Source of the DNA: Salpingoeca rosetta | Lineage: Eukaryota; Protista; Choanoflagellata | Assembly: GCA_033442325.1 (NCBI GenBank) | Contig: JAWQFM010000016.1 | Coordinates: 1,097,679-1,161,678 of the forward strand | Direction: 5' to 3' | DNA: 64,000 nucleotides | Part shown: positions 50,939 to 51,367 of the stretch, piece after piece | Numbering within the stretch: position 1 is the stretch's first letter | Layout: each line of letters opens with the position of its first letter | The notes under the pieces: generated by a model | Seen by the model: the letters and a program-made list of their open reading frames with translations, nothing else | Databases searched by the model: none | What the model was told of the DNA's origin: nothing | Translations under genes and position numbers: made by a program

Positions 50939-50947
50939 TTTATAAAA
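50939..50947 (+). promoter_or_regulatory. TATA box (TTTATAAAA) about 27-29 nt upstream of the putative Pol III RNA
   Basis: An AT-rich TATA is rare in this GC-rich window, and its spacing matches U6/7SK-type promoters. Confidence 0.55.
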
Positions 50948-50967
50948 CCAAACAAAGCGACGTTTGC

Positions 50968-51357
50968 ACCCTGATTGGGAGTGGGATGTTGTTTCTCTCG
51001 TTGGTCGACTGGTTTGGGTTCGAGCCTGGACGCCTCACATTTCCGACGCCCTTGATCGACGCGTCACGCGCCAATTTCTTGCTCTATCATGCCAAGAAAT
51101 CACACTTGATGCCTGAGTCCCTCTGCCGTGGCTTGCTTCCGCTAGACCCAGCGATCGCTTGTTCCCGCTTAACACAGCAGCGGTGACGCAGAAAGGTGAC
51201 CGATGTGTGTTAAGGCGCCCCAGTGATGGCCCCTTGAGGGTATCAACCCTCACAACCAGCAGCTGCACCCATTGGCGCTGCAGCAAAACGTCTTCACGTT
51301 GCCCAACAAGGCGACCGCGGGAGTACTGCGCAGACATCATCCCATCGCGATCAGGGT
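50968..51357 (+). ncRNA. Putative structured RNA polymerase III transcript, ~390 nt, family unidentified
   Basis: Paired ends ACCCTGAT / ATCAGGGT extend to GGGATGTTGT / ACATCATCCC. There are at least five internal hairpins, a B-box-like GGTTCGAGCC at 51017-51026, an upstream TATA and a T9 run directly downstream. The sequence has no microsatellites. Confidence 0.6.
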
Positions 51358-51358
51358 A

Positions 51359-51367
51359 TTTTTTTTT
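51359..51367 (+). terminator. Oligo-T Pol III terminator candidate
   Basis: T9 run one base after the terminal helix. Confidence 0.5.

What the first reader, a model, noticed from the sequence alone, without database searches (positions are those of the whole stretch)
50939..51367. Unannotated, highly structured ~390-nt putative Pol III RNA gene between dynein and SLC35F
Seen: TATAAAA at 50941, with an A 27 nt later starting ACCCTGAT, which pairs perfectly with ATCAGGGT (51350-51357). A and T9 follow directly. Pairing extends through GGGATGTTGT/ACATCATCCC. Internal stems: 50999-51008/51052-51061 (GU-rich), ATTTCTTG/CAAGAAAT (51074-51100), CTTAACACA/TGTGTTAAG (51168-51214), TGAGGGT/ACCCTCA (51235-51252), GCTGCA/TGCAGC (51262-51284). 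A B-box-like GGTTCGAGCC sits at +50 and an AGTGG A-box-like motif near +13. The region lacks the microsatellites found everywhere else. I could not find RNase P/MRP P4, SRP helix-8, U3 boxes or a CCCTAA telomerase template. Inference: a novel Pol III RNA. A divergent 7SK-like RNA is one hypothesis (similar size, GGAUG...CAUCC closing stem, three GAUC motifs).
Basis: partly seen in the sequence, partly recalled or inferred. Interest (0 to 1): 0.8.

Follow-up and report, generated by a model that had tools for sequence, protein, structure and literature searches.

The report
Unannotated structured Pol III-type RNA gene
Between two protein genes of the choanoflagellate Salpingoeca rosetta lies a real, expressed, unannotated gene for a roughly 390-base, tightly folded non-coding RNA with the hallmarks of RNA polymerase III transcription; it matches no known RNA family, and the suggested link to animal 7SK RNA is not supported.

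Summary
The window is Salpingoeca rosetta scaffold GL832968.1. The element lies in a 1,145-bp unannotated gap between the convergent dynein and SLC35F coding regions.

Stranded RNA-seq shows a separate + strand transcript:
- The dynein mRNA is polyadenylated at 50795.
- Depth is zero over 50867-50947.
- Reads start at or before 50981 and stop at about 51358, next to the T9 run.
- An independent run assembled a 373-nt contig covering 50987-51358.

The fold is exceptional. The z-score is -4.7, while 62 control windows of the same size reach only -2.2. The first ten bases pair with the last ten before A+T9. TATAAAA sits at -27, and a B-box (GGTTCGAGCC) at +50 is the only one in the window.

No Rfam family matches, even at E<=10. 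There is no RNase P/MRP CR-I, no telomerase template, no tRNA, no coding signal and no target-site duplication. The 7SK idea fails two defining tests: there is no bulge-flanked GAUC/GAUC helix and no 3'-terminal hairpin.

Best reading: a Pol III-transcribed scaffold RNA of an undescribed family. No orthologue could be obtained, so the function remains inferred. The scan had not noted this element before.

The parts
50941..50947 (+). TATA box (TATAAAA); its first base lies 27 nt upstream of the inferred start
   Evidence: Sequence. TATAAAA followed at 15-25 nt by ACCC occurs only here and in the duplicate copy, with 0 expected by chance.
50968..51358 (+). Body of the non-coding RNA (about 391 nt plus a short U tail)
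   Evidence: Stranded RNA-seq shows zero depth at 50867-50947, fragment ends at 50981/50983/50988 with about 20 reads already present upstream of 50981, and a fall in depth to about 1 after 51353. A 373-nt contig in run X6 covers 50987-51358. MFE is -153.1 kcal/mol with z = -4.66.
50980..50984 (+). A-box-like core (AGTGG) at +13 to +17
   Evidence: Sequence. Only the core matches the tRNA A-box consensus, so this is weak on its own.
51017..51026 (+). B-box-like element GGTTCGAGCC at +50 to +59
   Evidence: Matches GGTTCGANNC. It is the only occurrence on either strand of the 64-kb window apart from the duplicate copy.
50968..50977 (+). 5' strand of the terminal panhandle
   Evidence: Pairs with 51348-51357; 10 bp, mean probability 0.99.
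51348..51357 (+). 3' strand of the terminal panhandle, followed by A51358
50982..50994 (+). 5' strand of the second and third helices of the closing rod
   Evidence: 50982-88 pairs with 51338-44 (P 0.99) and 50990-94 pairs with 51332-36 (P 0.92).
51332..51344 (+). 3' strand of the second and third helices of the closing rod
51074..51100 (+). Internal hairpin ATTTCTTG/CAAGAAAT
   Evidence: P 0.87.
51154..51227 (+). Long internal stem-loop (ATCGCT/AGTGAT, TTAACACA/TGTGTTAA, CGGT/ACCG)
   Evidence: P 0.82-0.91.
51235..51252 (+). Internal hairpin TGAGGGT/ACCCTCA
   Evidence: P 0.95.
51262..51284 (+). Internal hairpin GCTGCA/TGCAGC
   Evidence: P 0.87.
51359..51367 (+). T9 run, the inferred Pol III terminator
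   Evidence: Sequence. RNA depth falls from about 8 to about 1.4 across it.
46838..47120 (+). Truncated identical second copy (promoter plus the first 256 nt), cut off by an assembly gap
   Evidence: It lies in a 2,520-bp block between N runs that is 99.4% identical to 48703-51223, so it is probably assembly redundancy.

Best explanation
This is an independent, unannotated gene of Salpingoeca rosetta for a highly structured non-coding RNA of about 390 nt. RNA polymerase III most likely transcribes it from a mixed promoter (an upstream TATA box at -27 plus internal A- and B-box-like elements at +13 and +50) and terminates in the T9 run.

The first and last bases of the transcript pair in a long panhandle. 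This leaves only a short 3' A-U(n) tail, which is the usual binding site for La-type proteins on nascent Pol III transcripts. The core carries at least four or five stable hairpins.

I infer that it works as the RNA scaffold of a ribonucleoprotein, in the way vault, Y, 7SK, EBER or VA RNAs do. It belongs to a family not represented in Rfam.

Shown: the discrete transcript, its strand, its approximate ends, the exceptional folding and the absence of known-family signatures. Inferred: the polymerase, La binding and the scaffold role.
For: - **Separate transcript.** Stranded RNA-seq from two 2026 runs gives a + strand transcript separated from the dynein mRNA. That mRNA's poly(A) site is at 50795, and 80 nt of zero depth follow. 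The transcript begins at or before 50981 and ends at about 51353-51358. Two older runs assembled contigs starting at 50987, and one of them ends exactly at 51358.
- **Unannotated.** The interval lies between the annotated CDS ends at 50485 and 51631 of GCA_000188695.1.
- **Fold.** z = -4.66, compared with a minimum of -2.2 in 62 control windows.
- **Ends pair.** The ends predicted independently from the TATA spacing and the T-run pair over 10 bp with P 0.99.
- **Promoter elements.** The B-box match is unique in 128 kb of sequence and lies at the tRNA-like position.
- **Not polyadenylated.** No poly(A) loose ends were seen at the 3' end, whereas the neighbouring mRNA's were detected.
- **Not coding.** The sense 66-aa ORF and the antisense ORFs have no Pfam match and no homologue.
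- **Not mobile or a tRNA.** There is no tRNA and no target-site duplication.
Against: - No orthologue could be retrieved, so there is no covariation or conservation evidence.
- The polymerase is inferred from sequence signals only. A TATA box at -27 would also suit Pol II.
- The A-box match is only a 5-nt core.
- Coverage falls about ten-fold from 5' to 3' along the RNA. This could reflect library bias on a structured RNA, or a more abundant shorter 5' species.
- One run's contig runs on past the T-run to 51564. That is probably a merge with the antisense SLC35F 3' UTR, but read-through cannot be excluded.
- Poly(A) reads at the low-depth 3' end could have fallen below the reporting threshold.
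- Genome-wide copy number was not measured.
Confidence: 0.7

Rival explanations
1. It is the choanoflagellate orthologue of 7SK RNA, the Pol III scaffold that, with HEXIM, LARP7 and MePCE, sequesters P-TEFb.
For: - The size (about 390 nt) is in the range of invertebrate 7SK.
- It has an upstream TATA box and a U-tail.
- It has long-range 5'-3' pairing that includes GGGAUG.../...CAUCCC, reminiscent of SL0 in the 'circular' 7SK model (PMC10083321).
- An alternative hairpin can pair GGUC with GAUC.
- HEXIM-like proteins exist in choanoflagellates, including the sister species Microstomoeca roanoka.
- 7SK evolves too fast for homology searches to find it reliably (PMC2655684).
Against: - No hit to Rfam 7SK or Arthropod_7SK even at E<=10.
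- The GGUC/GAUC helix lacks the flanking U bulges and the central A-U pair on the 5' side, both of which HEXIM binding needs (PMC2995076). It has only about 0.11 ensemble probability.
- No 3'-terminal hairpin precedes the U-tail, because the 3' end is in the panhandle.
- Three GAUC motifs is the chance expectation.
- S. rosetta (EP00044) is absent from every HEXIM file of Chivu et al..
Confidence: 0.1
2. It is an oversized relative of vault or Y-type RNAs, meaning a Pol III RNA bound through its panhandle by a TROVE-domain protein (TEP1 or Ro60).
For: It combines an upstream TATA box with internal A/B-like boxes, a 5'-3' panhandle and a U-tail. That is the gene and RNA layout of vault RNAs, as I recall it from established knowledge. 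An unchecked scan note (s1-435883) reports a vault PARP gene in this genome. Vault and Y RNAs are largely unknown outside deuterostomes.
Against: It is three to four times longer than any described vault or Y RNA. There is no Rfam Vault or Y_RNA hit at E<=10. The B-box lies near the 5' end rather than close to the 3' strand of the panhandle.
Confidence: 0.07
3. It is a short Pol II transcript, either a small mRNA for the 66-aa ORF starting at 50986 or a short lncRNA.
For: A TATA box at about -27 also fits Pol II. The transcript is present in libraries that may be poly(A)-selected, at depths similar to neighbouring mRNAs. An ATG-initiated 66-codon ORF exists.
Against: - The transcript ends at a T9 run with no poly(A) reads, while the neighbour's poly(A) was seen.
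- Coverage is biased to the 5' end.
- The ORF has no Pfam hit and no homologue among 5.8 billion proteins.
- The extreme folding and exactly paired ends are not expected of an mRNA.
Confidence: 0.07
4. It is a transcribed copy of a tRNA-derived SINE or other mobile element.
For: A- and B-box-like motifs lie at tRNA-like positions. A second copy lies 4.1 kb away. This genome holds odd tRNA-derived repeats according to unchecked scan notes.
Against: - The second copy lies in a gap-bounded block 99.4% identical over 2.5 kb including the flanks, so it is a duplicated or redundant assembly segment, not an insertion.
- There is no target-site duplication of 7 nt or more and no A-rich or simple-repeat tail.
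- ARAGORN finds no tRNA.
- The ends pair perfectly, which SINEs do not require.
- RNA runs assemble it as a single clean contig without variants.
Confidence: 0.04

Closest known systems
7SK snRNA (Rfam RF00100, RF01052)
   Same: A Pol III-type gene with an upstream TATA box and a T-run. The length is 300-450 nt. It has long-range pairing of the 5' end with a 3' region, and a U-tail.
   Different: It has no bulge-flanked GAUC/GAUC HEXIM site and no 3'-terminal LARP7 hairpin. It has an internal B-box, whereas 7SK promoters are purely upstream (my recollection of established knowledge). There is no covariance-model hit.
Vault RNAs (RF00006)
   Same: A mixed Pol III promoter (upstream TATA plus internal A and B boxes), a terminal panhandle formed by the 5' and 3' ends, a variable core and a U-tail.
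   Different: It is about 390 nt against 80-150 nt. The B-box is not adjacent to the 3' panhandle strand. There is no model hit, and association with vaults is untested.
Viral EBER and VA RNAs and cellular Y RNAs
   Same: They are Pol III transcripts whose ends pair in a terminal stem and leave a La-binding U-tail. EBER genes also combine a TATA-like upstream element with A and B boxes (my recollection of established knowledge).
   Different: Those RNAs are 100-170 nt long and unrelated in sequence. This RNA is a host gene lying between host genes.
RNase P and RNase MRP RNAs
   Same: The size is similar. The closing helices formed by the two ends look superficially like P1/P2, and in animals these genes use an upstream Pol III promoter.
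   Different: There is no CR-I (GNAANNUCNGNG) and no GAAAGUC motif. There is no hit to any P or MRP model at E<=10.

Membership tests
7SK snRNA | Matches the Rfam 7SK or Arthropod_7SK covariance models | tested here: not met
   cmscan found no match at gathering score, nor at E<=10 with lax filters on 1,301 nt and on 411 nt.
7SK snRNA | 5' hairpin with a GAUC/GAUC helix flanked by U bulges (the HEXIM site; PMC2995076) | tested here: not met
   The only candidate is GGUC (51003-06) paired with GAUC (51054-57) inside a continuous 10-bp helix without bulges. Its ensemble probability is about 0.11 and it lies 3.5 kcal/mol above the MFE.
7SK snRNA | 3'-terminal hairpin immediately before the U-tail (the LARP7 site) | tested here: not met
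   The last 10 nt before A+U(n) pair with the 5' end (P 0.99). The nearest local hairpin, found by eye at about 51317-51331, lies roughly 27 nt upstream of the tail.
7SK snRNA | Long-range pairing of the 5' end with a 3' region (SL0) | tested here: met
   50968-94 pairs with 51332-57. However, the pairing includes the extreme 3' end, unlike 7SK.
7SK snRNA | HEXIM partner encoded in the same genome | tested here: inconclusive
   HEXIM Pfam hits are reported in M. roanoka and B. monosierra. The S. rosetta identifier EP00044 is absent from all HEXIM supplementary files of Chivu et al.. I did not search the genome itself.
Pol III-transcribed gene | Terminates in a run of at least 4 T, with no internal T4 | tested here: met
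   T9 lies at 51359-67, the RNA contains no TTTT, and RNA depth drops across the run.
Pol III-transcribed gene | Recognisable promoter (upstream TATA at about -25 to -30 and/or internal A and B boxes) | tested here: met
   TATAAAA at -27 and B-box GGTTCGAGCC at +50, unique in the window. For the A box, only the AGTGG core is present.
Pol III-transcribed gene | Pol III occupancy or inhibitor sensitivity | not testable with these tools
   This needs ChIP or inhibitor experiments.
Vault RNA | Length of 80-150 nt, and a match to Rfam Vault | tested here: not met
   The transcript is about 390 nt and gives no hit at E<=10.
RNase P / MRP RNA | CR-I / P4 motif (GNAANNUCNGNG or GAAAGUC) and a model match | tested here: not met
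   The regex search found none, and there is no Rfam hit.
Telomerase RNA | Template complementary to more than one TTAGGG repeat | tested here: not met
   The longest permuted CCCTAA word is the 6-mer AACCCT, and it lies inside a hairpin stem. The telomere repeat itself comes from unchecked scan notes.
tRNA-derived SINE | Many dispersed copies with target-site duplications and a 3' A-rich or repeat tail | tested here: inconclusive
   Within the window there is only this locus plus a gap-bounded duplicate segment. There is no direct repeat of 7 nt or more at the flanks and no tRNA. Genome-wide copy number was not measured.

The most novel reading that the evidence does not exclude
The RNA is the long-sought pre-metazoan counterpart of a fast-evolving animal Pol III scaffold RNA. 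The most interesting version is 7SK, which would mean that RNA-based control of P-TEFb and promoter-proximal pausing predates animals. In that case its HEXIM and LARP7 sites would have been remodelled beyond recognition.
Probability: 0.1. Interest if true: 0.85.

Novelty: new variant of a known kind. Interest (0 to 1): 0.55.

Why it matters
Salpingoeca rosetta is the main experimental model for the closest living relatives of animals, and its non-coding RNA inventory is poorly known. This RNA is structured, clearly expressed, about 390 nt long and of an undescribed family. It is a concrete new component that can be studied with the genome editing already established in this species.

Several fast-evolving Pol III scaffold RNAs of animals (7SK, vault, Y) have no known counterpart outside animals. 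HEXIM-like proteins have recently been reported in choanoflagellates. This RNA therefore makes one question directly testable at the bench: did any of these RNPs exist before animals? If it proves lineage-specific, it is still an example of a large panhandle Pol III RNA with a mixed promoter.

Tried and rejected
- **Rfam.** Searched at gathering score on the whole window and at E<=10 on 1.3 kb and on 411 nt. Only two chance hits came back, a lncRNA fragment upstream and a trypanosomatid H/ACA model at 14 bits.
- **tRNA.** ARAGORN found no tRNA. My manual threading of the 5' 70 nt onto a cloverleaf failed. I had considered a tRNA with a giant insert because this genome has odd tRNA introns, but RNA-seq shows no splice or back-splice joint inside the RNA.
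- **RNase P/MRP and telomerase.** No CR-I or GAAAGUC motif and no telomerase template were found.
- **Coding test.** The sense 66-aa ORF and two longer ORFs that overlap the element (one on each strand) have no Pfam match, and the 66-aa ORF and a 108-codon antisense open frame have no homologue. The antisense search was also meant to catch spurious ORFs called on orthologous RNA contigs of related species. It found nothing.
- **Orthologue hunt in metagenomes.** One scan with an A-box...B-box pattern gave a single hit, apparently prokaryotic by eye, with no BLAST similarity to the window.
- **Orthologue hunt by synteny.** SLC35F relatives were searched. The only near relative, labelled by a gene-number tag of the style used for Barroeca monosierra and 67% identical, sits on a 1.5-kb contig, so synteny was not usable.
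- **Other assemblies.** Only the 2011 assembly holds the locus, so the duplication could not be resolved.
- **Earlier scan findings by sequence.** Nothing was returned.
- **Not attempted.** I did not search S. rosetta for HEXIM with a sequence copied from a paper's supplement, to avoid pasting a long sequence.
- **Failed run.** A first, larger z-score control timed out. The smaller one is the one used.

Full report
**Where we are.**
The SLC35F-like ORF at 52619-54235 (- strand) is PTSG_06351 of Salpingoeca rosetta. The locus is scaffold GL832968.1 of assembly GCA_000188695.1 and is identical to the window. This confirms by test what earlier scan notes had said about the organism. In that annotation the dynein heavy-chain CDS (+ strand) ends at window 50485, and the SLC35F CDS (- strand) ends at 51631. 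The reported element (50968-51367) therefore lies in a 1,145-bp unannotated gap between two convergent genes.

**The observation.**
All the listed sequence features are present.
- TATAAAA lies at 50941-47.
- An A at 50968 starts ACCCTGATTG, which pairs with CGATCAGGGT at 51348-57 (9 Watson-Crick pairs plus 1 G-U).
- A51358 follows, then T9 at 51359-67.
- The partition function gives this helix P=0.99. The closing rod continues through 50982-88/51338-44 and 50990-94/51332-36.

**Is the fold more than chance?**
- The whole RNA folds to -153.1 kcal/mol, z = -4.66 against 100 dinucleotide shuffles. The reverse strand gives z = -2.5.
- As a genome-specific control I scored 62 evenly spaced 394-nt windows across the 64 kb. 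The mean z was +0.31, the sd 1.29 and the minimum -2.2. The candidate scored -3.97 with the same 14-shuffle procedure, so it is a clear outlier.
- The B-box-like GGTTCGAGCC at +50 is the only match to GGTTCGANNC on either strand of the window, apart from the duplicate copy.
- Three GATC motifs is what the composition predicts (1.45 expected, P=0.18).
- Absence of an internal TTTT is common for windows of this size.

**A second copy.**
The promoter and the first 256 nt recur identically at 46838-47120, where an N run cuts them off. That copy belongs to a 2,520-bp block (44601-47120) flanked by N runs on both sides. The block is 99.4% identical to 48703-51223, flanks included. All 16 differences lie in the first ~1.5 kb of the block, upstream of the RNA gene. 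This looks like a redundant contig placed in the scaffold, or a very recent segmental duplication. It does not look like a mobile-element insertion. There is no direct repeat of 7 nt or more at the element's borders.

**Expression.**
The sequence is held by 17 public runs of this organism. I laid two stranded 2026 RNA-seq runs and two older runs kept as contigs on 50300-52700. The strand convention could be calibrated on the neighbours. The dynein 3' UTR (+ strand) appears as 'first mate on -' and carries poly(A) loose ends at 50795. SLC35F (- strand) appears as 'first mate on +' and shows a GT..AG intron at 51832-52142. In both raw-read runs:
- depth is about 100 (X18) and about 50 (X19) over the dynein 3' UTR;
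- depth is about 2 or less after the poly(A) site and exactly 0 over 50867-50947;
- depth then rises on the same strand inside 50948-51028;
- fragment ends pile up at 50981, 50983 and 50988, but depth beside 50981 is already about 25, so molecules start further upstream, consistent with 50968;
- depth peaks at 80 in 51029-51109, declines to 8 at 51272-51352, and falls to 1.4 past the T-run.

One older run assembled a 373-nt contig covering exactly 50987-51358. Another assembled a 605-nt contig (50987-51564) that probably merges with the antisense SLC35F 3' UTR. No poly(A) tails, splice joints or back-splice joints were reported inside the element.

So there is a discrete + strand transcript of about 390 nt. 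It is independent of both neighbours, and its ends coincide with those predicted from the TATA box and the T-run.

**What it is not.**
- **Any Rfam family.** There were no hits at gathering score in the window. At E<=10 there were only two chance hits, neither to 7SK, RNase P or MRP, SRP, vault, Y, U3 or telomerase models.
- **A tRNA**.
- **RNase P or MRP.** There is no CR-I (GNAANNUCNGNG) or GAAAGUC motif.
- **Telomerase RNA.** The longest permuted CCCTAA word is a 6-mer inside a stem. The TTAGGG telomere repeat comes from unchecked scan notes.
- **A protein-coding gene.** The sense strand has a 66-codon ATG ORF and the antisense strand longer open frames. None has a Pfam match or any homologue.

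**The 7SK hypothesis.**
- *For.* HEXIM-like proteins have been reported in choanoflagellates (Chivu et al., PMC11482795), including the sister species Microstomoeca roanoka and Barroeca monosierra. 7SK evolves too fast for reliable homology detection (PMC2655684). The RNA has the right size and a long-range 5'-3' helix like SL0 of the 'circular' 7SK model (PMC10083321).
- *Against.* HEXIM recognition depends on a GAUC/GAUC helix bracketed by bulged uridines, and it is lost when the 5' A-U pairs are changed or the bulges deleted (PMC2995076). Here the only analogue is GGUC/GAUC in an unbulged 10-bp helix that is a minority conformer. The 3' end lies in the panhandle rather than after a terminal LARP7-type hairpin. 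The gene has an internal B-box. S. rosetta (EP00044) appears in none of the HEXIM candidate files of that study, which could mean loss or an unannotated gene.

I rate 7SK at about 0.1.

**Most likely mechanism.**
- The signals fit Pol III transcription from a mixed promoter of the kind I recall for vault RNA and EBER genes. These signals are a TATA box at -27, an AGTGG core at +13, a B-box at +50 and a T9 run where the RNA stops.
- The transcript's two ends form a panhandle and extended rod of about 25-38 bp, leaving a 3' A-U(n) tail. On other Pol III RNAs that tail binds La-family proteins, and the paired ends protect against exonucleases.
- The core presents several stable hairpins that could dock proteins.
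- I therefore read it as the scaffold RNA of an RNP, from a family not yet described.
- The transcript, its ends, its strand and its fold are shown. The polymerase, the La binding and the scaffold role are inferred.

**Limits.**
I could obtain no orthologue.
- A metagenome pattern scan gave one chance hit.
- Relatives of the neighbouring gene sit on contigs too short for synteny.
- Only one assembly holds the locus.

Hence there is no covariation evidence, no genome-wide copy number, and no resolution of the duplicated block. The 5'-biased coverage is unexplained. It may reflect library bias or a shorter 5' species.

Noticed in passing
window 44601-47120 vs 48703-51223; N runs at 43850-44600 and 47121-47581: A 2.5-kb block between two assembly gaps is 99.4% identical to the sequence 4.1 kb downstream, which includes the dynein 3' UTR and the first 256 nt of the RNA gene. 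It is probably a redundant contig in the 2011 scaffold, and it may distort the annotated 3' end of the 4,592-aa dynein gene model that spans it.
   Followed up: partly
window 50795 (+ strand): RNA-seq reads carry untemplated A runs here, which marks the poly(A) site of the upstream dynein mRNA. It lies about 310 nt past the annotated stop at 50485 and 173 nt before the RNA gene's start.
   Followed up: partly
window 51434-52555 (- strand): The SLC35F (PTSG_06351) transcript shows an intron at 51832-52142 (GT..AG on the - strand) and further exons at 52143-52297 and 52503-52555. Its 3' UTR reaches to about 51434, only about 70 nt from the RNA gene's terminator, so the two transcription units converge closely. 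One run's contig bridges them.
   Followed up: partly
window 51029-51352: Coverage of the new RNA falls about ten-fold from its 5' third to its 3' end in both raw-read runs, with no internal T4 run to explain early termination. This could be bias from structure, or a stable 5' fragment.
   Followed up: no
literature, PMC11482795 supplementary files 52-73: S. rosetta (EukProt EP00044) is missing from the HEXIM candidate sets, although its sister species Microstomoeca roanoka has a clear HEXIM Pfam hit. This means either gene loss or an unannotated gene in S. rosetta.
   Followed up: partly
L001 (metagenome contig Ga0209415_10001073): This is the only metagenome match to the A-box...B-box pattern. 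It is an unrelated GC-rich contig that looks prokaryotic by eye, so it is a chance hit with no similarity beyond the pattern.
   Followed up: yes
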